Of a DNA stretch of 64,000 nucleotides, positions 1 through 62,187 are shown piece after piece. The first letter of the stretch is position 1; the number at the start of each line of letters is the position of its first letter. The notes below the pieces were generated by a model. The model had not been told where the DNA came from. It worked only from the letters and a program-made list of their open reading frames with translations, and made no database searches. Both the position numbers and the translations under genes were made by a program. The DNA is from Macrostomum lignano (taxonomy: Eukaryota): positions 186,001-250,000 of the forward strand of contig NIVC01000876.1 of NCBI GenBank assembly GCA_002269645.1. Direction: 5' to 3'.

Positions 1-903
1 GAGGTTCTCTGGCTTCCACTGCTCGACCGGCGTCTCCTCCACCATTCGGAACGTGATAGTCTTCGCGTGGTACGGCTTCAGGCCTTGCTGGTTGAAGCCG
101 TCCTTGCTGCAGATGACCTTCTTTACCAGGTACTTGAGAGTGACAAACAGCTGGCCTTGGAGAGTAGTGAGACTTCTGAGCATCCGCTTCTCCAGGAAGC
201 TGGTGCTCACACGGAGCTCCTGGCCTCCTCGACCAGGAGAGGCTGCGTGCACCACGTGACAGGGCGTTGAGTCGGAGTCGACATCTTGTTGTAGAGCCTG
301 CAGAACAGACTTTGGTATGTTTGAGTTGAAGACTCGAGGAGGCTGGAGCGGCCTAATGCTCGGGTAGCAGCAAAGAAGATCGGCTAAGACGTTGTCAACC
401 GCCGGTTTTAGAGCAGACCCAACTGAAGCGAGTGCCGGACTTGAGGCTGCAATTAAAAGAGTTCAGCAGTTAGGGCAGAGCGATCTTCTAAAAAGCAGAA
501 GTAAAACACAAAGCAGCAATGAATTTATAATAAGTGTAGAAACTGTAAATTATTACCGAATCCATCGCGAGAGATATGTCCATTGAGGTACTCATTCTGG
601 AGGCTCGCCAGGGTGTTGCACTTGCATGGTCCTTTCGGGTGATGAATTTGACCTTGGATCAATCTCATCACATCTATGTCGGACTCCTTTGCAGTTAGAC
701 CGTCCAAGGTCTTCAGACTGTTGCCCCAGCCTTCTGAGTAGCTTCCAACCACAAATATGCCATCGTATCTCAGTCTTTTTTGCATAATTTCTTGCAATAC
801 ATCAGCTACAGCACTTTGGAGGGAAGCTCTGGAGTCCACGAATCCAGATTGAGTAAGAGCTGAGTGCAGCTTGATACTCAGCTCTGAGTCACTGAGTGCG
901 TCA
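1..903 (-). CDS. Exons 2-3 of the fusion gene: Mab-21/cGAS-like nucleotidyltransferase domain
   Basis: Exon 2 (903-557) carries GS (746-741) and DID (680-672). Exon 3 (446-1, not in the ORF track because it has no start codon) reads ASSPALASVGSALKPAVDNVLADLLCCYPSIRPLQPPRVFNSNIPKSVLQALQQDVDSDSTPCHVVHAASPGRGGQELRVSTSFLEKRMLRSLTTLQGQLFVTLKYLVKKVICSKDGFNQQGLKPYHAKTITFRMVEETPVEQWKPENL. Confidence 0.88.
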
Positions 904-2584
904 CTGAAATGATTCAGTTCGAATGGATTGGTGTGAGGTATAAATTTTCCCTACTTCAAAGCAGCTGCATGAAATTAACCTTAACTTACGTTTCCAGTAA
1001 AGTTGAGACTGGACTGCCATGCACATCAAAAGTTATCACCGGTTGACCGAGTTGCACTCCGTTAAGTAGCTGAGCAATTTTCTGATGACCGAAACGAAAT
1101 GCAATATCGAGAGGTCGCTCGCCGCTGCTTGACTTAAGGTCAATGTCAGCACCAGACTTGAGCAGTAATTTCACTACATCACAATGCCCCCTCTGTGAGG
1201 CTATATGCAAAGCCGAGTAACCCCGGGCCGAAATGCAGTGAACATCAGCTTGCGCATTGATTAGAGAATTCACAACTTTAACATGACCATGGTGGGAAGC
1301 GATGTAAAGTGGTTGGTGCCCAATGCCTGTCCTAGCGTCAACGTCTGCTGAAGATTTAATGACAGACTCGACAGTCAGGTGATGACCCCGCTGTACTGCT
1401 GCGTGCAGTGGTAAGTAACCCCACTTCGATGCGAGGTTAACATCAGCTTGAGCTTTGATGAGGCAGTCTAACACACGGCTGTGACCATTCTGTGCAGCAA
1501 TGTGAGCTGCCGTGAGACCGTTAACTGTTTGGATATTAAGGTCAGCATTTGATCCGATCAGGGACTCGACGACCTCCCAGTGACCATGCTGCGCTGCTCT
1601 ATGCAAAGCTGAAAATCCCTTTCGCGACTGAAGATCGACATCGGCTTTGAACTTGATGAGCAAGTCCACAATATCTTTAAAGCCATTAAGCGAAGCTATT
1701 TGTAGGACAGAGTCACCATAACTTGTCGAATAGTTCACATCAGCTAGTGCCCTGAGGAGTAGCCCAACAACTTGCACTTGACCACCAAGTGTCGCCGCGT
1801 ACAGTGGAGACAATTCGACTTTTTCATGAAGATTAACGTCGGCTCCTGCTTTGATGAGTGCGTCGACTACCCTCACATGGCCATACCTTGACGCGACACA
1901 CAGAGGAGATGAGCCATTGCTTGCGAGAATATTTATTTCTGCTTGTGCACTGATGAGCGATTTGACAACTAGCTCGTGCCCCACTTGAGAGGCGATGTAG
2001 ATTGGGCAGGAACCGCTGCTGTTTCGAGCATTGACGTCGGCTTGCGCTTTGATGAGTGCGTCAACAACTCGCTGATGCCCGTTCTGCGATGCGATGTGGA
2101 GTGGCGAGAATCCGTCCAGTGTTTGAAAATTGACATCAGCCTGCGCACCAATCAGCAGATTCACGACGTCAACATGTCCATTTTGCACCGCTACGTACAA
2201 TGGCGAAGTGCCACTCGATCCACTTGATAGATTTACGTCGGCTTGAGCTTTTACAAGCAAGTCCGCTACGTTTAGATGGCCATTCTGGGCTGCGATGTAC
2301 AATGGGGGCGATGAGGATTCGCCAAGTTTAGAATGAATGTCGGCATCGGCCGCTGCTTTGAGCAGTCTGCGGACGGAGCGGTGCTGCCCGACCACGCAGG
2401 CCAGCTGCAGCGGGGAGATCCTTGCTCCTCTGAACTCGCAGAACTCATCAACGCTCATGGCGCAGTTCAGACACCGTTCGATCATTCTCAATTCGCCAGC
2501 TTCTATGGCAAACAAAAAGTCTCGAGCTGTCAGCTCATGCTTGTCATCGCAGTGTCGCTGGAGCGGTGTAGCTGCCTCCTGCAT
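1..2584 (-). CDS. Ankyrin-repeat / Mab-21 (cGAS-like receptor, cGLR) nucleotidyltransferase fusion protein; 3 exons visible, 3' end outside window
   Basis: Exons (minus): 2584-990, 903-557, 446-<1. Intron 989-904 (GTAAGT...ATTTCAG, 86 nt, phase 2, AC+T=Thr). Intron 556-447 (GTAATA...TTGCAG, 110 nt, phase 1, G+CC=Ala). The spliced frame is stop-free for 796 codons. NTase motifs: GSYSEG...SDIDVM, AVDNVLA, LRVSTSFLEKRML, LKYL, PYHAKT...WKPENL. Confidence 0.88.
990..2584 (-). CDS. Exon 1 of the fusion gene: about 14 ankyrin repeats plus a degenerate N-cap
   Basis: 33-aa periodic motif G.SPL.IA...GH..VV..LI.A.ADVN in ORF 986..2584. The ORF-track stop lies inside a GTAAGT splice donor at 989. Confidence 0.95.
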
Positions 2585-2996
2585 CGGTAATGACGACGAA
2601 CAGTTTTCAATGCTTCAGTGAAATTAACCTCGCGACCTGTGCCTAAAACTTGTACGAATAGACTTCAATGCGTGCATTATAGCATAGCATTAGCTATTTA
2701 AGTGTGTGCAGGCATTTTCGTTTTCCGCAACTGTTGGCAGCGAAGCTCTGGACCAATTAAAAGCAATGTGTCTTTATATCTCTTTAAAACTTTCTGAGTT
2801 GATTTTTTTAATACAAGCTTGTTTGTTCTCATTCTGGTTATAAAATGTGAAAGGCCACGAGAGCGACCCGTTGAAAAGTAAAATCCGACAAACGTCAACT
2901 TAATTCATAGTTTTGACAAGTAGCTCATAGTTTAACAGTTCATTCTCAAAAAGCAGTGAAGCTCCTTGTACAAAACTTCATTGGTTTGAAATGACC

Positions 2997-4423
2997 TCAA
3001 TTTCCATTTCGAATGGTCATCTCCAAGTCCAGCAGCAGGTCCGTTGAGCGAAGGCTCGACTCGCTGCAAACCTGAATCTCCAAATTCTCTAACTCAGCCT
3101 CCGACTGATGAAGCTCGTCTTGCTGCAGCTCGGCCGCAGCAGCAGAAGCTGGCGCTTCTTTGCCTCTGCCAGCCGCTCCTGCAGAGCGTCCTCTTGGCGC
3201 TGCTGGGTCCACCGGTTGCTTGGGGACACATAAGGATGGTGTTGAAGTTAATACTCTAAACTCTGACTTCCGACTGTTCTCACTCCTCGACTGTCACTAC
3301 CCGACTGTCACTACCCGACTGTCACTACCCGACTGTCACTCCCCAACTGTCACTCCCCAACTACTACCCGACTGTCACTCCCCAACTGTCACTACCCGAC
3401 TGTCACTCCCCAACTGTCACTACCCGACTGTCACTCCTTAACTGTCACTTCCCGATTGTCACTTCCCGACTGTCACTCTCGACTGTCACTCCCCGACTGT
3501 CACTACCCGACTGTCACTACCTGACTGTCACTCCCAGACTGTCACTTACCCGACTGTCACTCGCCGACTGTCACTTAAGTCACTACTTTCAGATCACCTC
3601 ACAGGCCGCTACTCACCTTTTACCTTCAAGGCAGTTCGCTGCATCCAGCATCGCCACGGCCACCTGCCGAGCCTCGCGCCGCCGCCAGAGAGTCTCCCGT
3701 TGCCTCTGCCGCTCTTCAGTCAGCTTTGAGTTCAGCAGCTGCAGCCCCACAAGCAGCTCAGCGGCCTCTGTAGTCGCCGCCTCCGAGCTGCCTTCCGCCT
3801 CTCTCGGCTCCTCAGCCGCTACTTCCGGCCGACCAGCACGATCCGGCGAGTCCAGCCGCCACCGTCAGCTGCCTGCGCCACGCCCGGCCGCGCCCGCCTC
3901 GCGTAGTCCGGCAGCGGCTGCTCTCGACGCTTCGCCGCCGCCGCCGCTGCCGTCATCGTACCCGCCACCTTCTGCCAAGCGTCGCGGCCGACCTCGCGGA
4001 GAAACTCCTCCACGCGGGCCTTCGCGCGGCGCTCCTCACTGAGGCCCGACATGCGGTCCACCTCCGTGTGAGCGATGGAGGGCCCGCCTCGCTGCGCAGC
4101 TGGGGAGATGGTCAAAAATGTCAAGCCTCTCACCCAGCATCTCAGCCTCACCCAGCAGCTCAGCCTCACCCAGCGTCTCAGCCTCACCCAGCATCTCAAC
4201 TCCATCCTGATTAAAAGTGTCAAGTTCCATCCTCAGCCTCATCATCACCCAACATCACGGCTTCATCCTTACCGAGAACCTCAGCCCGGTCCCGTAATTC
4301 TTTCTGTCCGCTGTCAATGCAGTCTCCCAGACTCCTCAGGCCTCGCCTCATCCTTGCGATGCTCTCAATGAATCTGACCGCTTTGCGCTGCAACAGCTCG
4401 GATGACAGTCGGGCAAAGTCCGC
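2997..4423 (-). pseudogene. Orphan coiled-coil protein gene, at least 3 exons, two apparent 1-nt frameshifts (pseudogene or consensus error)
   Basis: Exons 4423-4273 (ADFARLSSELLQRK...), 4099-3617 and 3218-~2997, with phase-compatible GT/AG sites (TTCAG|4423, 4273|GTAAG, CCCAG|4099, 3617|GTGAGT, CCAAG|3218). E/R/Q/L-rich helical peptides (TEERQRQRETLWRRREARQ; QRQEDALQERLAEAKKRQ). An upstream exon may lie near 5100-5240 but no donor was identified. Confidence 0.45.
3288..3576. repeat. 14-bp minisatellite (CCGACTGTCACTAC-like), intronic
   Basis: Tandem degenerate copies seen directly. Confidence 0.9.
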
Positions 4424-4451: not shown

Positions 4452-5105
4452 GGAAATATGAGGGAATATGGGGAAATATGGGGAAATATGGAGAAATATG
4501 GAGGAATATGGGGAAATATGGAGAAATATGGAAAAATATGCAGAAATGTGCAGAAATATGCGGAAATGTGGGGAAATATCGCGAAATATGGAGAAATATG
4601 CAGAAATATGCAGAAATATGCAGAAATATGCGGAAATATCGGGAAATATCGGGAAATATGGAGAAATATGGAGAAATTTGGGGAAATGTGGGGAAATATG
4701 GGGAAATATGGAGAAATATGGAGAAATGTGGGGAAATATGGGGAAATATGCAGAAATATGCGGAAATATCGGGAAATATCGGGAAATATGGAGAAAATGG
4801 AGAAATATGGAGAAATATGGGGAAATATGCAGAAATATGCAGAAATATGCGGAAATATAAGGAAATATGCAGAAATATGGGCAAATATGGTAAAATATGG
4901 AGAAATATGGAGAAATATGGGGAAATGTGGGGAAATACATGGAGGGGGAAATATGAGGAAATATGCGGAAATATCGGGAAATATGGGGAAATATGGAGAA
5001 ATTTGGAGAAATATGGAGAAATATGGAGAAATATGGAGAAATATGGAGAAATTAGAAATATGCGGAAATATGGGGAAATATGGGGAAATATGAGGAAATA
5101 TGGGA
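4452..5105. repeat. 9-10 bp minisatellite (GGAAATATG / GAGAAATATG / CAGAAATATG)
   Basis: Tandem copies; source of the spurious MEKYGEIWRN-type ORFs. Confidence 0.95.
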
Positions 5106-5825: not shown

Positions 5826-6690
5826 GGTTACATTCCCACAATCTGGAGAATGTCAGAGTCGTGTTCATCCCGAAACCCGCCAAGGGTGACTACACCAACG
5901 TGAAATCCTTCCGGCCCATCAGCCTCACCTCCTTTTGTGTTAAGCTGATGGAGAGGCTCATCCTGTGGAAGCTTCGAGAGTGCGACCTGCGCTCCGACCC
6001 CGTCAGTAAGTACCAGTACGCCTTCCAGCCTGGGAAGACGACTAAGCACGCTCTCCATGCCATTACCTCCAAGATCGAGAGTGCCATCCTTAGCAAACAA
6101 CTCGCTTGCGGGATGTTTGTTGACTTCGAAGGAGCATTGGACAATGTCCTTTTCCGCTCCTTCAGAAACTCTCTTTCCCGCAGGAATGTGAGACACAGCA
6201 TTGTCCGCTGGATTTATTTTATGATCCGCAATAGGTTTGCGACATCTACGCTTATGGGCGTTACCTACACCCGGGCGGTGATGAAAGGCGGCCCCCGCAA
6301 GGTGACGTGCTGACTCCACTTCTTTGGAATCTCGTCATGGACGAGCTCCTAACCGCTGACATCCCCAGCAGTATCACCAGGGCGGGCTACGCCGATGACG
6401 TTGCCGCGGTCGTCAGCGGACCCGACCCCGCCACTCTGCGCAACCTGATGCAGCAATTTGCCGACAAGGCGGCCGACTGGGCTACGCAGCATGGCCTAAA
6501 TATCAGCGTCACCAAGACTGTCGCTGTCGTATTCACCAAGCGCGGTGCGTGGGAGATGCAAAACCTCACTGTCTATGGTAGAAACATCCCCTTCAAGAAG
6601 GACGGCAAATACCTCGGTGTGACGCTAACGCATGACCTGCGCTGGACGAAGCACCTTGATAACGTCATCGTGTCGGGCAAAAGCTGCGCA
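5826..6690 (+). mobile_element. Non-LTR retrotransposon reverse transcriptase fragment (R1/LOA-like), truncated at both ends and frameshifted
   Basis: [75 protein letters not shown]. Frameshifts near 5850 and 6295. Confidence 0.93.
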
Positions 6691-6962
6691 GAGCCATCGG
6701 GCCATCGAGCCATCCTTCCTTCCTTCCTTCCTTCTTTCCTTCCTTTAGAACTCCGGCAAGATAGACAAGAAAATTTTTCTTTATCACAAAACATGATACT
6801 GAATATGGTCAGTGTTGAGTATTTATTGAATACTTTAAATTCACAATAACATTACCATAGTATTCAAACAAAATTCTAAAATGTAATGTCTAATATAATC
6901 AGGACACCAAAACACGAGTGCAAACAGGTGTTGAGTCTTTGTGTAATAAACTCCAATTGAAG

Positions 6963-9700: not shown

Positions 9701-13300
<3,600 letters not shown>

Positions 13301-24769: not shown

Positions 24770-27700
24770 ATGCCCCTGCCTAGCAAGTCTCGGGTGTATG
24801 CAGATGCCAATCAGGTCCGGGAACGGCAGTACTGGGACTACGAAGTGCTTGTGATTGAATGGGGCAACCAGGATGACTATCAGATTGTGCGCAAGCTCGG
24901 CCGGGGCAAGTACTCGGAGGTGTTCGAGGGAATCAATGTTGCCGCGAATGAGAAAATTGTCATTAAGGTGAGCGCATTAAAATGCTTTTAATATTGCCAG
25001 CATTGTGTCAAATTTATCAGCAGAATTTGAATCCGTCTCATAGTCTTCTAGATTATATTTCTCATGACTCATGGATTTCTGTCAGTCATAGCTCATGACC
25101 CATATAGATTTGTCAGTCATTACTCATGACCCATTTAGACTTGTGTCAGTCATAGCTCATGACTCATTTAGATTTTGTCAGTCATAGCTCATGACCCAAT
25201 TAGATTTCTGTCAGTCATTGCTCATGACCCATTTAGATTTCTGTCAGCCATTGCTCATGACCCAATTAGATTTTGTCAGTCATAGCTCATGACCCAATTA
25301 GATTTCTGTCAGTCATTGCTCATGACCCATTTAGATTTCTGTCAGCCATTGCTCATGACCCAATTAGATTTGTGTCAGTCATAGCTCATGACCCATTTAG
25401 ATTTGTGTCAGTCATAGCTCATGACCCATTTAGATCTGTGCCAGTCAGCTCATGACCCATTTAGATTTCATCTACAAAAGTCTTCAAAATTGGCAGGTGC
25501 TCAAGCCGGTAAAAAAGAAGAAGATCAAGCGGGAGATCAAGATTCTGGAGAATCTGAAAGGCGGCGTCAACATCATCGGTCTCCAGGGCATCGTCAAGGA
25601 CCCGGTGTCGCGCACGCCCGCCCTGATCTTCGAGCACGTGAACAACGCGGACTTCAAGCAGCTGTACCAGACTCTCACGGACTATGATATTCGATTCTAC
25701 CTATTCGAACTGCTGAAGGCATTGGACTATTGTCACAGCAAGGGCATCATGCATCGGGATGTGAAGCCGCACAATGTCATGATTGACCACGAGCACAGAA
25801 AGGTTAGTTAGCCAAACTAAGCTGAGCACTAAGTAGATGTCGAAGCATCAGCCTATTAACATAAAGGTATACTTACTCCCGCTTTTTACCCAACAGTCGG
25901 TATGATGAAGATCTGGAATTTTAGCCGATAAATTACTTTACTATTTTTAACCTCTATCGCTGCATTACAATGCGACAGTGGCTATCGATACATATCGGCA
26001 TACATTAGCTACGATTCACTTGTAGCAGGCAGTCGATCTGTGGAGGCTCTTTGATTTTTCTGGAGCCGTTCACTTTTGCAGCTGTTTGACAGCACAAGAT
26101 CTTTTAATGCTCTTTTAATATCTTTTTATCTACATTCCCCAGTTTATCTGATAGATGTGAATTCCCTAGTTTATCTCAGAGATCTGATTTCCCCAGTTCA
26201 TCTCAGAGATCTGAATTTTTCAGTTTACCTCAGAGATCTGAATTCCCCAGTTCATCTCAGAGATCTGAATTCCCCAGTTTATTTGAGAGATCTGAATTCC
26301 CCAGTTCATCTCAGAGATCTGAATTCCCCAGTTTATCTCAGAGATCTGAATTCCCCCGTTTATCTCAGAGATCTGAATTCCCCAGTTTATCTCAGAGATC
26401 TGAATTCCCCAGTTCATCTCAGAGATCTGAATTTCCCAGTTTATCTCAGAGATCTGAATTCCCCAGTTTATCTCAGAGATCTGAATTCCCCAGTTCATCT
26501 CAGAGATCTGAATTTCCCAGTTTATCTCAGAGATCTGAATTCCCCCGTTTATCTCAGAGATCTGAATTCCCCAGTTAATTTGAGAGATCTGAATTCCCCA
26601 GTTCATCTCAGAGATCTGAATTTCCCAGTTTATCTCAGAGATCTGAATTCCCCCGTTTATCTCAGAGATCTGAATTCCCCAGTTTATCTCAGAGATCTGA
26701 ATTCCCCAGTTTATCTCAGAGATCTGAATTCCCCAGTTCATCTCAGAGATCTGAATTCCCCAGTTTATCTCAGAGATCTGAATTCCCCAGTTTATCTCAG
26801 AGATCTGAATTCCCCAGTTTATCTCAGAGATCTGAATTCCCCAGTTTATCTCAGAGATCTGAATTCCCCAGTTTACTTTACCTAAATTCTTGCAGCTTCG
26901 CCTCATTGACTGGGGCCTTGCGGAGTTCTACCACGCCGGCCAGGAGTACAATGTGCGGGTGGCATCCCGGTACTTCAAGGGGCCCGAACTGCTGCTGGAT
27001 TATCAGGTTTGCCTTTGACATCGCCTTGCTTTGATACTTTAAATATCATTGCGAAATATAACCTCTGGTATGGCAGCTCAGGTAGCTTCAGGTATGGCAG
27101 CTCAGGTAGCTTCAGGTATGGCAGCTCAGGTAGCTTCAGGTATGGCAGCTCAGGTAGCTTCAGGTATGGCAGCTCAGGTAGCTTCAGGTATGGCAGCTCA
27201 GGTAGCTTCAGGTATGGCAGCTCAGGTAGCTTCAGGTATGGCAGCTCAGGTAGCTTCAGGTATGGCAGCTCAGGTAGCTTCAGGTATGGCAGCTCAGGTA
27301 GCTTCAGATATGGCAGCTCAGGTAGCTTCAGGTATGGCAGCTCAGGTAGCCTCAGCTTCCTCGCTTCACACGCCCGTCCAGATGTACGATTACTCCTTGG
27401 ACATGTGGAGCCTGGGCTGCATGTTCGCCTCCATGATCTTCAAGAAGGAGCCGTTCTTCCACGGCCACGACAACTACGACCAGCTGGTGCGCATCGCCAA
27501 GGTGCTGGGCACCGACGAGCTGTTCGCCTACATCAGGAAGTACCAGATGGCATTGGACGCGCGGTTTAACGACATTCTGGCCAAGCACAGCAGGAAGCGG
27601 TGGGAGCGCTTCGTCCATACCGCAAATCAGCATCTCGTCAGCGCCGAGGCCATCGACTTTCTCGATCGGCTGCTGCGCTACGATCACGCGGAGCGCCTCA

Positions 27701-28990
27701 CCGCCAGGGAGGCCATGGAGCATCCTTACTTCAGTGAGCTGAGCTGGCGTGTGGGATATGGGAATGAAGTGTGGGATCTGGGACTGAAGTGTGGGGATCT
27801 GGGAATGAAGTGTGGGATATGGGACTGAAGTGTGGGGATCTAAGACTGAAGTGTGGGATATGGGACTGAAGTGTAGGGATATGGAATGAAGTGTGGGATA
27901 TGGGACTGAAGTGTGGGATATGGGACTGAAGTGTAGGGATCTGAACTGAAGTGTAGCGATATGGACTAAAGTGTGGGATATAGACGAAAGTGTGGGATAT
28001 GGGACTGAAGTGTGGGGATATAGGAATGAAGTGTGGGATATGGGACTGAAGTGTGGGGATCTAAGACTGAAGTGTGGGATATGGACTGAAGTGTAGGGAT
28101 ATGGGACTGAAGTGTAGGGATATGGGACTGAAGTGTAGGGATATGGGGCTGAAGTGTAGGGATCTGAGACTGTAGTGTAGGGATCTATTGCTCTATATCT
28201 GGGATCTAGGTTCTAGATAAAAGATATAGAAATATAGTTATGGGTGGGATCTGAGACTTGAGACTGAAGCAGCATCTGAGTCAATGGAGCTCCGTCCCCC
28301 TCTGTCTGCCCCGCAGCTCCCATCGTGCGGGACCAGGGCGGCATGCCGCCAGCAAACTCCTCCGCTCTCGCACCTGACGGCACGGCCGGTTCCGCTGGGG
28401 CCACCGGCATCGGCGGCAGCTCCGCAGGCGGTGAGTAGATTATGAGATGCTGGGAGATTAGATTATGAGATGCTGGGAGATTAGATTATGAGATGCTAGA
28501 AGATTAGAGATGCTAAGAGATAGATTATGAGATGCTAGGAGATTAGATCATGAGATGCTGGGAGATTAGATTATGAGATGCTAGGAGATTAGATTATGAG
28601 ATGCTAGGAGATTAGATTATGAGATGCTAAGAGATTAGATTATGAGATGCTAGGAGATTAGATCATGAGATGCTAGGAGATTAGATTATGAGATGCTAGG
28701 AGATAGATTATGAGATGCTGGAAGATTAGATTATGAGATGCTAGGACATTAGATCATGAGAGTCTAGGAGATAGATTATGAGATGCTAGGAGATTAGATC
28801 ATGAGATGCTAGGAGATTAGAATATGAGATGCTGGGAGATTAGATCATGAGCTGTCAGGAGATTAGATCAAGAGCTGCTAGGAGATTAGATAATGAGCTG
28901 AAAAATGTCGAATCGCTTCTCCCAACCCCCGCAGCTGTCGGCTACGGCACAGCCACCTCAGGCAGTTCGGGTCCCATCTATCAGAACTGA
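24770..28990 (+). CDS. CSNK2A1: Casein kinase II subunit alpha, 378 aa, 6 exons
   Basis: Exons 24770-24967, 25497-25802, 26896-27006, 27382-27733, 28317-28430, 28935-28990 (1137 nt, phase-consistent). GCCGCCATG start; [43 protein letters not shown]. Confidence 0.97.
25075..25468. repeat. 32-33 bp minisatellite, CK2a intron 1
   Basis: GTCAGTCATAGCTCATGACCCATTTAGATTTGT. Confidence 0.93.
26140..26876. repeat. 27-bp minisatellite, CK2a intron 2
   Basis: GAGATCTGAATTCCCCAGTTTATCTCA. Confidence 0.95.
27066..27352. repeat. 24-bp minisatellite, CK2a intron 3
   Basis: GGTATGGCAGCTCAGGTAGCTTCA, near-perfect. Confidence 0.95.
27745..28190. repeat. 20-21 bp minisatellite, CK2a intron 4
   Basis: GGGACTGAAGTGTGGGATAT. 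Confidence 0.93.
28437..28900. repeat. 23-bp minisatellite, CK2a intron 5
   Basis: GATTAGATTATGAGATGCTAGGA. Confidence 0.93.
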
Positions 28991-38860: not shown

Positions 38861-39299
38861 TATCGAACATGGCTCGAGTTCGCATTTGAAAAGTCCACCC
38901 AGAGCTGGCCAAAGCTCGTAATGAGCGGGGAGTGAAGGCGGGCTGCAGTGCACTTGGTGGCTCTGCCCTATCGCACTATTATTAACACTGGGCTACTTGC
39001 AGTTCGCACCCCCGCCCTCACTGTGCGCCTCTGTCCCTCCCTCCAGGGTCTCGTTTAGTTTGTCAATCAACGAATATCCAGAGGGGCAGCCCCCCACTGC
39101 TCTGCTATTGACTTTGCAAACTGTATCGGTCATTTTGAAGCTCCCCCGAGCAGTTGAAGGGGTTCAATGTTTTTGTGAACTTTGCAGATGAGCTGTGGAA
39201 ATTGACAGCTCTGTTGGCGCTCTGAATGATCTGGCGCGGAAATAAATGTTGAGATTTGATGCCTGTGGCGCTTAACTGCGAGACAAACTGTGCTAAATC

Positions 39300-41365
39300 C
39301 GGTGTCAGATGGTGCCTAATGTGTGTCAGATGGTGCCTAATGTGTGTCAGATGGTGCCTAATGTGTGTCAGATGGTGCCCAATGTGTGTCAGATGGTTTG
39401 TAATGTGTCAGAGAGGGATCCTAATACGGCTGTCAGATGGTGTCTAATTTGTCAGAGAAGGATCCTAATACGGCTGTCAGATGGTGTCTAATGTGTCAGA
39501 GAAGGATCCTAATACGGCTGTCAGATGGTTTGTAATGTGTCAGAGAGGGATCCTAATACGGCTGTCAGATGGTGTCTAATTTGTCAGAGAAGGATCCTAA
39601 TACGGCTGTCAGATGGTGTCTAATTTGTCAGAGAAGGATCCTAATACGGCTGTCAGATGGTGTCTAATTTGTCAGAGAAGGATCCTAATACGGCTGTCAG
39701 ATGGTGTCTAATTTGTCAGAGAAGGATCCTAATACGGCTGTCAGATGGTGTCTAATGTGTCAGAGAAGGATCCTAATACGGCTGTCAGATGGTGTCTAAT
39801 GTGTGTCAGATGGTGCCTAATGTGTGTCAGATGGTGCCTAATGTGTCAGAGAGGGATCCTAATACGGCTGTCAGATGGTGTCTAATGTGTCAGAGAAGGA
39901 TCCTAATACGGCTGTCAGATGGTGTCTAATGTGTCAGAGAAGGATCCTAATCTGGCTGTCAGATGGTGTCTAATGTGTCAGAGAGGGATCCTAATCTGGC
40001 TGTCAGATGGTGTCTAATGTGTCAGAGAGGGATCCTAATCTGGCTGTCAGATGGTGTCTAATGTGTCAGAGAGGGATCCTAATATGGCTGTCAGGTGGCG
40101 TCTAATGTGTCAGAGAGGGATCCTAATCTGGCTGTCAGATGGTGTCTAATGTGTCAGAGAGGGATCCTAATCTGGCTGTCAGATGGTGTCTAATGTGTCA
40201 GAGAGGGATCCTAATCTGGCTGTCAGATGGTGTCTAATGTGTCAGAGAGGGATCCTAATCTGGCTGTCAGATGGTGTCTAATGTGTCAGAGAGGGATCCT
40301 AATCTGGCTGTCAGATGGTGTCTAATGTGTCAGAGAGGGATCCTAATACGGTTGTCAGATGGTGTCTAATGTGTCAGAGAGGGATCCTAATACGGCTGTC
40401 AGATGGTGTCTAATGTGTCAGAGAGGGATCCTAATACGGTTGTCAGATGGTGTCTAATGTGTCAGAGAGGGATCCTAATCTGGCTGTCAGATGGTGTCTA
40501 ATGTGTCAGAGAGGGATCCTAATCTGGCTGTCAGATGGTGTCTAATGTGTCAGAGAGGGATCCTAATACGGCTGTCAGATGGTGTCTAATGCGTCAGAGA
40601 GGGATCCTAATACGGTTGTCAGATGGTGTCTAATTTGTCAGAGAAGGATCCTAATACGGCTGTCAGATGGTGTCTAATTTGTCAGAGAAGGATCCTAATA
40701 CGGCTGTCAGATGGTGTCTAATGTGTCAGAGAAGGATCCTAATACGGCTGTCAGATGGTGTCTAATGTGTGTCAGATGGTGCCTAATGTGTGTCAGATGG
40801 TGCCTAATGTGTCAGAGAGGGATCCTAATACGGTTGTCAGATGGTGTCTAATGTGTCAGAGAGGGATCCTAATACGGTTGTCAGATGGTGTCTAATGTGT
40901 CAGAGAGGGATCCTAATACGGCTGTCAGATGGTGTCTAATGTGTCAGAGAGGGATCCTAATACGGTTGTCAGATGGTGTCTAATGTGTCAGAGAGGGATC
41001 CTAATCTGGCTGTCAGATGGTGTCTAATGTGTCAGAGAGGGATCCTAATACGGCTGTCAGATGGTGTCTAATGTGTCAGAGAGGGATCCTAATACGGCTG
41101 TCAGATGGTGTCTAATGCGTCAGAGAGGGATCCTAATACGGTTGTCAGATGGTGTCTAATGTGTCAGAGAGGGATCCTAATACGGCTGTCAGATGGTGTC
41201 TAATGTGTCAGAGAGGGATCCTAATATGGCTGTCAGATGGTGTCTAATGCGTCAGAGAGGGATCCTAATACGGCTGTCAGATGGTGTCTAATGTGTCAGA
41301 GAGGGATCCTATACGGTTGTCAGATGGTGTCTAATTTGTCAGAGAGGGATCCTAATATGGCTGTC
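39300..41365. repeat. 44-bp heterodimeric minisatellite, about 45 copies
   Basis: GTCAGATGGTGTCTAATGT (19) + GTCAGAGAGGGATCCTAATACGGCT (25); 21-bp monomers at the left end. Confidence 0.97.
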
Positions 41366-41749
41366 AAAGATGGTCAGGGAAGTGTCAGGGGAAGCCTAAT
41401 AAAAGTGTCAAGAAAACGCATACCCCAATAAAGTGCCCTCCGCCCCAGGCTGTTTCTGCAGTCTCGCATTGCGCCTGTCTTCCAGGGCCCGCGAGGCTGT
41501 CAATAAAGCAAACAAACTTGCCCGGCTGCCTCGTGTCGGCTTTCCCGCTGCCCCAATTGCGGCGATTCGCGTGAATCCCCGACCGGCTTCTCGTATTCAT
41601 CTTTGCCTCGCTGTTTATCCGATTTTTTCTGGACCCGTTGGCCCCCCAATGCTGGTCCTCTGTTGTTTGTGCCAGTGAACTTATTTCTGCTTTTGATGCA
41701 CTTTTGATGATGCAGCTGCTTGTGGGGATGATGAGATTGGAGACTGGCG

Positions 41750-58960: not shown

Positions 58961-59549
58961 GCATTCAAAGTACAGCAAATATTTTGATTAATTTTCTGCA
59001 TCTCCAGACTTTCTAAATTCACTCTTGCTTAAAGTAAATGCAGCCCGAGAGCTCCAGGCATTGAATTCTGAGCAGCCTCACCCATCATCCCATCGCCATC
59101 CCCTTTTTGTTGCCATGGAAACCAGACGGAATCATTTCAATCTTCGCTCGACGTTAGAGAGAGTTGCCTTCGCAGATGACATCGAAGCTGAAGCGGGAGG
59201 GGGTTGGGGCTGCCTTGTTTGCGGCCGCAAATCCCCTCTTAAGATCCCATCGGCTCGGATTGAAAGTGAAACGCTGCCGGTTTTCCCTGACATTGGCTTG
59301 GGGATTAAAATCCCCTCCCGAATCTTTTATCCCAGAGATTTCAAAACTTGTATTCGTGCGTATCAGCGAGATTGGTTTGATGAGCACGAGTTTTACCTGC
59401 CTGCGTCTCTCTGATTGCCCCGCTGCGAAATTGACATGACGGAAAACTTGGGGGGGAGGCGCACATGACCTGGATTGGGCTCGACTCGGTGAGGATTTTA
59501 TTCCCAATGAGGTGAACGCCTGTTGCTGATGGAGCGACACTATTTTAGC

Positions 59550-61510
59550 TGAGAAGACACTGAGACAGGCACTGAGACACTGAGACAGACAATGAGACAG
59601 ACACAGAGACAGACACAGAGACAGACACTGAGACAGACACTGAGACAGACACTAAAACAGAAACTGAGACAGACACTGAGACAGACACAGAGACAGACAC
59701 TGAGACAGACACTGAGACAGACACAGAGACAGACACTGAGACAGACACTGAGACAGACACTGAGACAGAAACTGAGACAGACACTGAGACAGACACTAAA
59801 ACAGACACTAAGACAGACACTGAGACAGACACTGAGACACTGAGACAGACAATGAGACAGACACTGAGACAGACACTGAGACAGACACTGAGACAGACAC
59901 TAAGACAGACACTGAGACAGACACTAAGACAGACACTGAGACAGACACTAAAACAGACACTCAGACAGACACTAAGACAGACACTGAGACAGACACTGAG
60001 ACAGACACTAAGACAGACACTGAGACAGACACTAAAACAGACACAGAGACAGACACTGAGACAGACACAGAGACAGACACTGAGACAGACACTAAGACAG
60101 ACACTGAGACAGACACTAAAACAGACACTAAGACAGACACTAAGACAGACACTGAGACAGACACAGAGACAGACACTGAGACAGACACTGAGACAGACAC
60201 TGAGACAGAAATTGAGACAGACACTGAGACAGACACAGAGACAGACACTAAGACAGACACTGAGACAGACACTGAGACACTGAGACAGACAATGAGACAG
60301 ACACTGAGACAGACACTGAGACAGACACTGAGACAGACACTAAGACAGACACTGAGACAGACACTAAGACAGACACAGAGACAGACACTAAAACAGACAC
60401 TAAGACAGACACTAAGACAGACACTGAGACAGACACTGAGACAGACACTGAGACAGACACTGAGACAGACACTGAGACAGAAACTGAGACAGACACAGAG
60501 ACAGACACAGAGACAGACACTGAGACAGACACTGAGACAGACACTAAGACAGACACTGAGACAGACACTAAGACAGACACTGAGACAGACACTAAAACAG
60601 ACACTAAGACAGACACTGAGACAGACACTGAGACACTGAGACAGACAATGAGACAGACACTGAGACAGACACTGAGACAGACACTGAGACAGACACTGAG
60701 ACAGACACTAAGACAGACACTGAGACAGACACTAAGACAGACACTGAGACAGACACTAAAACAGACACTAAGACAGACACTGAGACAGACACTGAGACAC
60801 TGAGACAGACAATGAGACAGACACTGAGACAGACACTGAGACAGACACTGAGACAAACACTAAGACAGACACTGAGACAGACACTGAGACAGACACTGAG
60901 ACAGACACTGAGACAGACACTGAGACAGAAACTGAGACAGACACAGAGACAGACACTGAGACAGACACTGAGACAGACACTGAGACAGACACTAAGACAG
61001 ACACTGAGACAGACACTAAGACAGACACTGAGACAGACACTAAAACAGACACTAAGACAGACACTGAGACAGACACTGAGACAGACACTAAGACAGACAC
61101 TGAGACAAACACTAAGACAGACACTGAGACAGACACTAAGACAGACACTGAGACAGACACTAAAACAGACACTAAGACAGACACTAAGACAGACACTGAG
61201 ACAGACACAGAGACAGACACTGAGACAGACACTGAGACACTGAGACAGACAATGAGACAGACACTGAGACAGACACTGAGACAGACACTGAGACAAACAC
61301 TAAGACAGACACTGAGACAGACACTAAGACAGACACTGAGACAGACACTAAAACAGACACTAAGACAGACACTAAGACAGACACTGAGACAGACACAGAG
61401 ACAGACACTGAGACAGACACTGAGACAGACACTGAGACAGAAACTGAGACAGACACTGAGACAGACACAGAGACAGACACAGAGACAGACACTGAGACAG
61501 ACACTGAGAC
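59550..61510. repeat. 12-bp minisatellite with block-level duplications
   Basis: GAGACAGACACT; a marker variant CTGAGACACTGAGACAGACAATGAG recurs six times. Confidence 0.97.
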
Positions 61511-62187
61511 AGTCGCAGCCCCGGCAGAAGACGCTGTGAGCTGACAGTCACTGAGTCCCCCAGTATACTTGGCCAGCCATGCGTGCAGCAGACCACAATG
61601 GCTGCCGCTCGCCTTTCATTCAAAGCTCAACAACAAAAGCCCAGACAAAAACATCAGACACTTGACTCAACGCGAGCTCTCAGTTCTCATCACGGCTGTC
61701 GGGGGGATTAGCGACACACCGAACCCGCCCCGGATTCCGCCAGCGGTTGCGCAAACCGCCCGACACCAGATGGTGCGCCGGCTAGCGCTCACCGCGGGGC
61801 GTCGCTCGCAGAGTTGATGATGACGCTGAGTGCGGGAGGCTGGGCTGAGCTGAGCTGAGTTCATCGTTTCGCTCAAAGTGGCGCACAAGATGAGCCGCCC
61901 GGAGCCCCGAGGCGGCGGCGGCGGACTCGTCCCGGCCATCAGCTTCCGCTCTGATGCGCTCGGAAGCCCCGCGCTGTGACGCCTCCTCGCCTAACATCGT
62001 CGCGAAGCCACTTGTGGGCTACTCGGCGAGGGCCAATTATGCCCGGCTTTGGATGGGCGAATGGAGGGCGACAGGGGTCAGCGCTGGAGAGGGGACAGAT
62101 GGCAGCTGCAATGCCGAATATTATATCGAGTAGGGCGGGATGCTAACTTGGTGTGACAGAGACTCGGAAATGCTCGGTGTAATTGAT

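What the first reader, a model, noticed from the sequence alone, without database searches (positions are those of the whole stretch)
1..2584. Hidden ankyrin-repeat + cGAS-like receptor (cGLR/Mab-21) fusion: candidate self-contained nucleotide second-messenger immune sensor
Seen in sequence: the ankyrin ORF does not really end at 986. Its stop lies inside a GTAAGT donor. Splicing across an 86-nt and a 110-nt intron keeps one frame for 796 codons, joining about 14 ankyrin repeats to a Mab-21/cGAS-fold nucleotidyltransferase that continues off the window. Established knowledge: animal cGLRs are pattern-recognition enzymes that make cyclic dinucleotides for STING. In the related OAS-RNase L pathway it is an ankyrin domain (of RNase L) that binds the nucleotide signal 2-5A. 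Inference: the ankyrin solenoid could be a protein-ligand sensor or autoinhibitory module replacing the nucleic-acid-binding N-terminus of cGAS, or a reader of the enzyme's own product. Domain-fused cGLRs are known in invertebrates, so I cannot say the architecture is new, but I know of no functional characterisation of such a protein.
Basis: partly seen in the sequence, partly recalled or inferred. Interest (0 to 1): 0.88.

Follow-up and report, generated by a model that had tools for sequence, protein, structure and literature searches.

The report
Flatworm ankyrin–cGAS-like receptor gene
This is the first two-thirds of a flatworm (Macrostomum) gene that joins 14 ankyrin repeats to a cGAS-like signalling enzyme; it is one of over a hundred paralogues of an already catalogued architecture whose trigger and product are unknown.

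Summary
The minus-strand ankyrin ORF (2584..986) ends in a TAA inside a GTAAGT donor. Removing two canonical GT..AG introns (989..904, 86 nt; 556..447, 110 nt) leaves 796 open codons that run off the window.

The spliced protein is collinear with full-length Macrostomum lignano proteins. The closest annotated paralogue (BOX15_Mlig016300g1) has introns at the same places and in the same phases.

Exons 2-3 have no direct Pfam or PDB sequence hit, but four other lines of evidence place them in the cGAS/cGLR family:
- The family profile hits only cGAS and cGLR1 in the PDB.
- Profile-profile comparison with published cGLRs gives 99.5% probability.
- An AlphaFold2 model (pLDDT 88.5) matches only cGAS and Cv-cGLR1 by Foldseek.
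- The motifs G-S, D-I-D, X55, D are present.

The architecture is not new. Li et al. 2023 list ankyrin-fused cGLRs, including M. lignano accessions. They also put five M. lignano relatives, cloned without the ankyrin part, into their biochemical screen; none is labelled active.

So this is a new paralogue of a known kind. Enzyme activity, ligand, product and receptor (STING or another) remain untested.

The parts
990..2584 (-). Coding exon 1. ATG at 2584..2582, 531 2/3 codons. N-terminal cap-like region plus the ankyrin array and a linker.
   Evidence: ORF list and splice test. In-frame stops lie just upstream of the ATG. Paralogues align from residue ~17.
1034..2431 (-). 14 ankyrin repeats of 33 aa (residues 52-517).
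   Evidence: Pfam Ank_2 E=2.8e-125, Ank 13 stretches. Register count.
904..989 (-). Intron 1, 86 nt, GTAAGT...TTTCAG, phase 2. Contains the apparent stop TAA at 988..986.
   Evidence: Same phase and position within one codon as intron 1 of Mlig016300g1.
557..903 (-). Coding exon 2 (115 2/3 codons). Holds the N-terminal spine helices of the NTase, G585-S586 (746..741), and D607-I-D609 (680..672).
   Evidence: The hhalign alignment places GS and DxD on the cGLR motifs. AF2 shows a helix-helix-strand-GS...strand topology.
447..556 (-). Intron 2, 110 nt, GTAATA...TTGCAG, phase 1.
   Evidence: Identical codon position and phase in Mlig016300g1. An intron sits at the same place in metagenome contig L002.
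1..446 (-). Coding exon 3, partial (148 2/3 codons, runs off the window). Contains the third catalytic Asp D665 (396..394), the PCHVV and LRVSTSFLE motifs, and the start of the Mab-21_C-like helical lobe (LKYLVKK...YHAKT...EQWKPENL).
   Evidence: About 330-370 further residues are expected beyond the window, by comparison with paralogues.
2585..2996 (-). AT-rich 5' flank (5'UTR/promoter region) between this gene and the end of an upstream minus-strand ORF (stop near 2997).
   Evidence: Sequence and ORF list. No function tested.

Best explanation
Window 2584..1 (minus strand) is the 5' two-thirds of one three-exon gene from Macrostomum lignano or a very close relative. It encodes an N-terminal 14-repeat ankyrin solenoid, a short linker, and a cGAS-like receptor (cGLR) nucleotidyltransferase domain. 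Shown here: the gene structure, the cGAS-like fold, and a complete G-S / D-x-D / D catalytic motif set that is at least 90% conserved across the family. Inferred: the protein is a cytosolic sensor enzyme that is inactive at rest and, when triggered, condenses NTPs into a nucleotide second messenger, most likely a cyclic dinucleotide. Also inferred: the ankyrin array, the faster-diverging part of the paralogues, supplies specificity by binding a protein or other ligand, or by holding the enzyme off until a ligand arrives. In this reading it replaces the nucleic-acid-binding N-terminus and the zinc thumb of cGAS, which are absent here. The expansion of the family to over 100 clusters at 50% identity in one flatworm fits an immune receptor repertoire. 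The downstream receptor is unknown.
For: Gene structure.
Family membership: the profile of the family hits only cGAS and cGLR1 in the PDB (best E=7.3e-6). hhalign against nine cGLR constructs from Li et al. gives 99.5% probability, E=1.3e-22, over 301 columns, with GS, DxD and the third Asp aligned. The AF2 model has pLDDT 88.5 and pTM 0.85. The Foldseek top 50 are all cGAS or Cv-cGLR1, with E from 2.4e-7 and TM 0.5-0.57. Pfam Mab-21_C scores above the gathering cut-off in 2 of 8 full-length relatives and just under it in most of the others.
Link to published cGLRs: direct BLASTP gives 33-40% identity (E 1e-59 to 2e-34) to the five M. lignano cGLRs in the Li et al. 2023 screen.
Conservation: catalytic S54, D75, D77 and D133 of the fragment are nearly invariant.
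Selection: dN/dS is 0.1-0.24 in all parts. ANK dN is 0.55, against 0.12-0.24 for the NTase exons.
Expansion: 103 clusters at 50% identity; every one whose source was shown or looked up is M. lignano.
Zinc thumb: the stretch between the WRLSFS-like and LKYL-like motifs is about 12 residues here and about 24 in cGAS.
Against: No transcript data were available, so splicing and expression of this particular copy are inferred from paralogues.
No enzymatic activity is known for any member. The five M. lignano NTase-domain constructs in Li et al. carry no 'active cGLR' label in Table S3.
Pfam Mab-21 (PF03281) does not match, and exons 2-3 alone hit nothing in Pfam or the PDB by sequence.
The window lacks the last ~350 residues, so I cannot show that the gene is intact.
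I could not check whether STING exists in Macrostomum. Li et al. say most flatworms lack cGLR signalling.
The predicted pI of the family cores ranges from 5.5 to 9.4 and says nothing about nucleic-acid binding.
Confidence: 0.6

Rival explanations
1. The protein is a real ANK-Mab21-fold fusion but works without catalysis, as a scaffold or adaptor. Precedents are MAB21L1/2 in development and shrimp Mab21 proteins reported to activate IKK-epsilon outside nucleic-acid sensing. In this reading the ankyrin array recruits partners.
For: No M. lignano construct is labelled active in the Li et al. screen. Pfam's Mab-21 NTase model does not match. A non-canonical Mab21 mechanism is published (PMC12928593, abstract seen).
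Against: GS, DxD and the third Asp are at least 90% conserved across diverged paralogues (27-74% identity). That is unexpected if catalysis were dispensable; Li et al. describe Mab21L1/2/3 as lacking a functional active site. The screen constructs lacked the ankyrin part and any unknown ligand, so their lack of an 'active' label is weak evidence.
Confidence: 0.2
2. This particular copy is an unexpressed or decaying paralogue, a young pseudogene in a large and repeat-rich gene family.
For: Its exact product is not among the database proteins; the closest has 74% identity in the NTase part and 52% overall. The 3' third lies outside the window and cannot be checked. The locus sits among dense minisatellites and a decayed retrotransposon.
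Against: 796 codons are open across two intact canonical introns. dN/dS is well below 1 in every segment. All catalytic and framework motifs are intact.
Confidence: 0.12
3. There are two separate genes: an ankyrin protein ending at TAA 986 and an independent NTase gene downstream.
For: The unspliced ORF does end at 986. Prokaryote-style gene callers split such loci, as in L002.
Against: Exon 2 has no in-frame ATG ahead of the conserved N-terminal helices. Dozens of annotated M. lignano proteins carry both parts in one chain, and the intron positions are conserved.
Confidence: 0.03
4. The NTase makes a different kind of product from a cyclic dinucleotide, for example linear 2'-5' oligonucleotides (OAS-like) or tails on RNA (TUTase or poly(A) polymerase-like).
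For: There are faint Pfam MTPAP-like palm matches (E~0.05) in relatives. UniProt names some fragments 'NTP_transf_2 domain-containing'.
Against: All significant PDB sequence and fold matches are cGAS or cGLR. No OAS or TUTase appears in the Foldseek top 50. The C-terminal lobe matches Mab-21_C.
Confidence: 0.05

Closest known systems
Macrostomum lignano ANK-cGLR paralogues, e.g. BOX15_Mlig016300g1 (P0129, 1148 aa) and PAA45980.1, PAA86972.1, PAA57558.1, PAA93208.1, PAA68676.1 (Li et al. 2023, Table S3 #89-93)
   Same: Same architecture (N-terminal ANK array, linker, cGLR NTase, conserved C-terminal extension). Same three-exon structure and intron phases. Same catalytic and framework motifs.
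   Different: Identity to the closest relative is only 52% overall and 74% in the NTase part. The exact protein is not in the databases searched. Relative to Mlig016300g1 the gene is a mosaic: dS is 0.12 in the last 91 in-window codons and above 2 elsewhere.
cGAS and characterised animal cGLRs (human, mouse and pig cGAS; C. virginica Cv-cGLR1, PDB 8gjw; cGLR1, PDB 8gjy)
   Same: Predicted fold, bilobal NTase core, G-S activation-loop motif, [D/E]h[D/E] X50-90 [D/E] triad, WRxSFSxxE-like and SYHxKT-like motifs, Mab-21_C lobe.
   Different: Sequence identity is 15-20%, and Pfam PF03281 does not match. The GS-to-DxD loop is about 9 residues longer and carries the conserved motif EGWGNxLxxLDGRTD. 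There is no cGAS-type zinc-thumb insertion, and an ankyrin array replaces the basic N-terminus. Activity, ligand and product are unknown.
ANK-fused cGLRs of other phyla (e.g. Stylophora pistillata; rotifer and mussel accessions in Li et al. Table S2)
   Same: Ankyrin repeats joined to a cGLR core. They were noted as possible protein or ligand interaction modules, and none has been functionally dissected.
   Different: Whether these fusions share an origin with the flatworm family was not tested. The flatworm family is a very large single-species expansion.
MAB21L1/2/3 (developmental Mab-21 proteins)
   Same: Same superfamily fold and the Mab-21_C lobe.
   Different: Li et al. describe those as lacking a predicted functional active site. 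This protein and its family keep GS, DxD and D.
OAS / RNase L pathway
   Same: An NTase-fold sensor plus an ankyrin domain within one signalling logic.
   Different: Here both modules sit in one polypeptide. No OAS structure appears among the top fold matches. Nothing tested here links these ankyrin repeats to nucleotide binding.

Membership tests
cGAS-like receptors (criteria of Li et al. 2023, PMC9980059, methods) | Predicted structural homology to cGAS | tested here: met
   AF2 model of the window's 264-aa fragment: pLDDT 88.5, pTM 0.85. Foldseek against the PDB: top 50 all cGAS or Cv-cGLR1, best E=2.4e-7, prob 1.00, TM (query) 0.5-0.57. The fragment lacks the last helices of the domain.
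cGAS-like receptors (criteria of Li et al. 2023) | G[S/G] activation-loop motif | tested here: met
   VGSYSEGWGN, G585-S586 (window 746..741). It aligns to the GS column of nine published cGLRs. S is at least 90% conserved in the family.
cGAS-like receptors (criteria of Li et al. 2023) | [E/D]h[E/D] X50-90 [E/D] catalytic triad | tested here: met
   D607-I-D609, then 55 residues, then D665 (PAVDNV). D665 falls in the column that holds SVDLVPAL of the coral cGLRs. All three are nearly invariant in the family.
cGAS-like receptors | Synthesis of a nucleotide second messenger on activation | not testable with these tools
   Five M. lignano relatives, cloned without the ankyrin part, were in the published 140-enzyme screen. 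None carries an 'active cGLR' label in Table S3.
cGAS-like receptors | A cognate receptor (STING or other) in the same genome | not testable with these tools
   No eukaryotic genome search remained available. No paper in the library treats Macrostomum STING. M. lignano is not in the held copy of Li et al. Table S5.
Pfam Mab-21 (PF03281, NTase part) | HMM match above the gathering score | tested here: not met
   No match at E<=1 for the window's exons 2-3, and none at E<=0.1 in eight full-length relatives.
Pfam Mab-21_C (PF20266, HhH/H2TH-like lobe) | HMM match above the gathering score (24.1 bits) | tested here: inconclusive
   The window ends inside this lobe, so the fragment gives no hit. 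Among full-length relatives, P0037 scores 28.1 bits and P0055 24.6 bits (above cut-off), while five others score 15.6-22.3 bits (below). Precomputed PF20266 hits appear on several more relatives.
Ankyrin-repeat proteins | Tandem 33-residue ANK repeats recognised by Pfam | tested here: met
   Ank_2 E=2.8e-125, Ank E=3.3e-87 with 13 stretches. 14 repeats in register.

The most novel reading that the evidence does not exclude
The flatworm ANK-cGLR family is a germline-encoded receptor repertoire. The hypervariable ankyrin solenoid, not nucleic-acid binding by the NTase, recognises pathogen or danger ligands and releases a cGAS-like enzyme. The product signals through a receptor other than canonical STING. 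This would partly replace the TLR/NLR/cGLR pathways that other flatworms have lost. It would also explain why ANK-less constructs were not flagged as active in the published screen.
Probability: 0.2. Interest if true: 0.7.

Novelty: new member of a known kind. Interest (0 to 1): 0.3.

Why it matters
The find corrects a likely annotation error, since an ORF-based reading would call only an ankyrin protein here. It also adds one more copy to a strikingly large ankyrin-cGLR expansion in a laboratory flatworm in which RNAi and transgenesis work.

The family is a good place to ask a question that remains open: what do the accessory domains of fused cGLRs do, and what activates the many 'orphan' cGLRs? 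This single locus does not open that question. The architecture and the M. lignano family are already in the supplementary tables of Li et al. 2023.

Tried and rejected
- **Direct Pfam scan** of exons 2-3 (E<=1) gave nothing.
- **Direct phmmer** against PDB sequences gave nothing. A shallow 8-sequence profile gave only chance hits.
- **First AlphaFold2 run** with the 8-sequence alignment was useless (pLDDT 37). It was replaced by the 30-sequence run.
- **My first guess for the third catalytic position** was PCHVVHAA, which would have implied a dead enzyme. I rejected it. The hhalign alignment and the relatives in Li et al. place the catalytic Asp in PAVDNV. CHVV aligns with the conserved GCHVV motif of mollusc cGLRs.
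- **Third homologue search** with a divergent-member alignment returned only 9 proteins, one of them new.
- **Predicted pI** as a proxy for nucleic-acid binding was uninformative: 5.5-9.4 across the family.
- **tblastn for further copies** in the window found none.
- **Literature search** for Macrostomum with STING, cGAS or Mab21 found nothing relevant beyond the Li et al. supplements.
- **Species assignment from shared repeats** with locus L001 found no shared repeats, only the paralogous exons.
Full report
**Observation**

On the minus strand an ATG at 2584 opens a 532-codon ORF that stops at TAA 988..986. It carries 14 in-register 33-residue ankyrin repeats at residues 52-517. Pfam gives Ank_2 E=2.8e-125. 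The stop lies inside GTAAGT (989..984).

I tested all nearby boundaries. The one fully canonical GT..AG solution is:
- exon 1: 2584..990
- intron 1: 989..904 (86 nt)
- exon 2: 903..557
- intron 2: 556..447 (110 nt)
- exon 3: 446..1

This gives 2388 nt, or 796 codons, with no stop, open to the window edge.

**Is the splice model real?**

No transcript data can be reached with these tools, so I used homology and gene structure.

The 264 residues encoded by exons 2-3 find only Macrostomum lignano proteins. A profile search of 1.84 billion cluster representatives found 103 clusters at 50% identity. Many are 1000-1400 aa, with this domain at about residue 500-800. Every one whose source was shown or looked up is M. 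lignano.

The spliced window protein aligns in one BLASTP HSP (residues 17-796) with such proteins at 42-52% identity. The alignment is gapless and well conserved across junction 2. It runs through a variable linker at junction 1.

The closest annotated relative is BOX15_Mlig016300g1 (P0129, 1148 aa). It is 74% identical in the NTase part and 52% overall. I fetched its locus from assembly GCA_002269645.1. Its CDS is reproduced by exactly three exons of 543 2/3, 114 2/3 and 490 2/3 codons.
- Intron 2 splits ...NGHIWCPGF|ASKPA with TTCG|GTAA...GCAG|C. That is the same codon position and phase as the window's ...NGHISRDGF|ASSPA.
- Intron 1 has the same phase and lies within one codon in the linker.

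Exon 2 has no in-frame ATG ahead of its conserved N-terminal helices. The two-gene reading is therefore very unlikely.

**What exons 2-3 encode**

Direct searches fail. Pfam finds nothing at E<=1, and PDB sequence searches find nothing. Deeper evidence converges on the cGAS/cGLR family.

1. Full-length relatives hit Pfam Mab-21_C (PF20266). P0037 scores 28.1 bits and P0055 24.6 bits against a cut-off of 24.1, and five others score 15.6-22.3 bits. The window ends inside this lobe.
2. A 22-sequence family profile with the window fragment first hits 15 PDB sequences at E<1e-4. All are cGAS or cGLR1; the best are 7lz3_A (E=7.3e-6) and 8gjy_A (E=1.4e-5).
3. hhalign of that profile against nine mollusc and coral cGLR constructs copied from Li et al. 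2023 Table S3 gives probability 99.5%, E=1.3e-22, over 301 aligned columns.
4. An AlphaFold2 model of the window's own fragment, built with a 30-sequence alignment, has mean pLDDT 88.5 and pTM 0.85. Foldseek against the PDB returns only cGAS and Cv-cGLR1 in the top 50. E-values start at 2.4e-7, probability is 1.00, and TM normalised to the query is 0.5-0.57.

**Active site**

Li et al. define cGLRs by three features: predicted structural homology to cGAS, a G[S/G] motif, and an [E/D]h[E/D] X50-90 [E/D] triad. The window protein has all three motifs:

| Feature | Residues | Window coordinates |
|---|---|---|
| G[S/G] | G585-S586 in VGSYSEGWGN | 746..741 |
| [E/D]h[E/D] | D607-I-D609 | 680..672 |
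| third acid, 55 residues on | D665 in PAVDNV | 396..394 |

In the hhalign alignment these fall on the GS, DxD and third-Asp columns of published cGLRs. The third-Asp column is the one that holds SVDLVPAL of the coral cGLRs. All are at least 90% conserved across paralogues that are 27-74% identical to the window fragment.

My first guess was that PCHVVHAA marked a degenerate third site. That was wrong: it matches the GCHVV motif that follows the core in mollusc cGLRs.

The domain differs from cGAS in three ways:
- The GS-to-DxD loop is about 9 residues longer and carries the conserved motif EGWGNxLxxLDGRTD. It is the least confident part of the model.
- The zinc-thumb insertion is absent. About 12 residues separate the WRLSFS-like and LKYL-like motifs here, against about 24 in cGAS.
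- There is a family-specific conserved His/Cys cluster between DxD and the third Asp.

**What is already known**

Li et al. [quoted passage not shown] Their Table S2 lists M. lignano accessions with Ank_2 domains. Their Table S3 lists five M. lignano proteins (#89-93) among the 140 enzymes screened. The window fragment is 33-40% identical to all five by direct BLASTP, with E from 1e-59 to 2e-34.

Construct #90 equals residues 323-721 of the 936-aa protein P0043. At least that construct therefore lacked the ankyrin part. None of the five carries an 'active cGLR' name in the table.

No paper in the library discusses these flatworm proteins, or Macrostomum STING, in its text. The architecture and the family are thus catalogued but functionally blank. 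This locus is a further paralogue that is not in the protein databases searched.

**How it most likely works**

Shown: one gene, an ankyrin array plus a cGAS-like fold, and an intact and conserved catalytic motif set.

The comparison with Mlig016300g1 adds the following:

| Segment | dN | dN/dS |
|---|---|---|
| ankyrin part | 0.55 | 0.20 |
| NTase exon 2 | 0.24 | 0.11 |
| exon 3 | 0.12 | 0.24 |

Synonymous sites are saturated outside the last 91 in-window codons, so the ratios are rough. They are consistent with purifying selection throughout and show a faster-changing ankyrin module.

Inferred: the protein is a cytosolic sensor whose NTase makes a nucleotide second messenger when triggered. 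The ankyrin solenoid provides specificity or autoinhibition. The >100-cluster expansion reflects a receptor repertoire. I put about 0.6 on this whole picture and about 0.9 on the gene model and fold assignment alone.

The main rival is a non-catalytic scaffold role, at 0.2. It is favoured by the lack of reported activity and disfavoured by the conserved catalytic residues. The product, the ligand and the receptor are all unknown. I could not test for STING in Macrostomum.

**Origin of the window**

Every homologue whose source was shown or looked up is from M. lignano, apart from one metagenome contig (L002). Against Mlig016300g1, synonymous divergence is saturated (dS>2) for the ankyrin part, exon 2 and the start of exon 3. 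It is only 0.12 for codons 706-796 (window 273..1).

That mosaic looks like gene conversion between paralogues. It argues that the window comes from M. lignano itself or a very close congener. The dense minisatellites also fit a highly repetitive genome.

**Verdict**

The functional interpretation is plausible but untested. Novelty is modest: a new member of a known kind.

Noticed in passing
window 273..1 (codons 706-796 of the gene) against L001 8378-8773: Relative to paralogue Mlig016300g1, dS is 0.12 in the last 91 in-window codons and above 2 in the rest of the gene. Nucleotide identity is 86% over window 1-396 against 67-73% elsewhere. This looks like a gene-conversion tract between paralogues.
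   Followed up: partly
L002 (JGI metagenome 3300040801, contig Ga0450804_4230032, 2867 bp), 149-499 and 1014-2528: An environmental contig carries an exon-2-like piece (57% identical) and an exon-3-like piece (49% identical) of this family, split by an intron at the same place. A prokaryotic gene caller called them as two genes. The family therefore exists outside the M. lignano reference data.
   Followed up: partly
outside the window; e.g. P0129 residues ~900-1148, A2 profile positions ~330-580: All full-length relatives share a conserved ~270-residue C-terminal extension after the Mab-21_C lobe (motifs FYFHPFLILP, LPDCARSARE, DSAWKFCF, FYMNFDALL). It has no Pfam or PDB sequence match.
   Followed up: partly
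window ~623..537 and ~375..370 (fragment residues H88, C93, C95, H109, C140/C141): A conserved His/Cys cluster lies between the DxD motif and the third catalytic Asp. It may be a family-specific metal site, in a different place from the cGAS zinc thumb.
   Followed up: no
P0010 and P0127 (database proteins): Two M. lignano gene models carry two NTase domains of this family in one chain. They are either tandem-domain proteins (as in OAS2/3) or merged neighbouring genes.
   Followed up: no
window 5861-6849 (+): Two adjoining ORFs match the two halves of Pfam RVT_1 (E=1.8e-11 and 3.8e-8). This is a decayed non-LTR-type retrotransposon fragment.
   Followed up: partly
window 12207-12746 (-): A large exon encodes two pore domains (Ion_trans_2, E=2.8e-29, with TIGYGN and TIGFGD motifs). 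It belongs to a two-pore-domain potassium channel gene.
   Followed up: partly
window 27067-27828 (+): The C-terminal lobe of a protein kinase (Pkinase E=2.4e-15; casein-kinase-2-alpha-like by eye) follows directly on a 24-bp minisatellite (27067-27355) that stays in frame with it.
   Followed up: partly
whole window, e.g. 4452-5104, 10001-10593, 39296-41366, 59549-61512: More than 40 distinct micro- and minisatellite arrays (periods 4-113 bp) occupy a large share of the 64 kb. Most long 'ORFs' in the window are translations of these repeats.
   Followed up: partly
window 2997-4223 (-): Short minus-strand ORFs just upstream of the gene (e.g. 2997-3212, ending ...LENLEIQV...MTIRNGN*) look like the 3' end of a neighbouring gene. 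They have no Pfam match and were not identified.
   Followed up: partly
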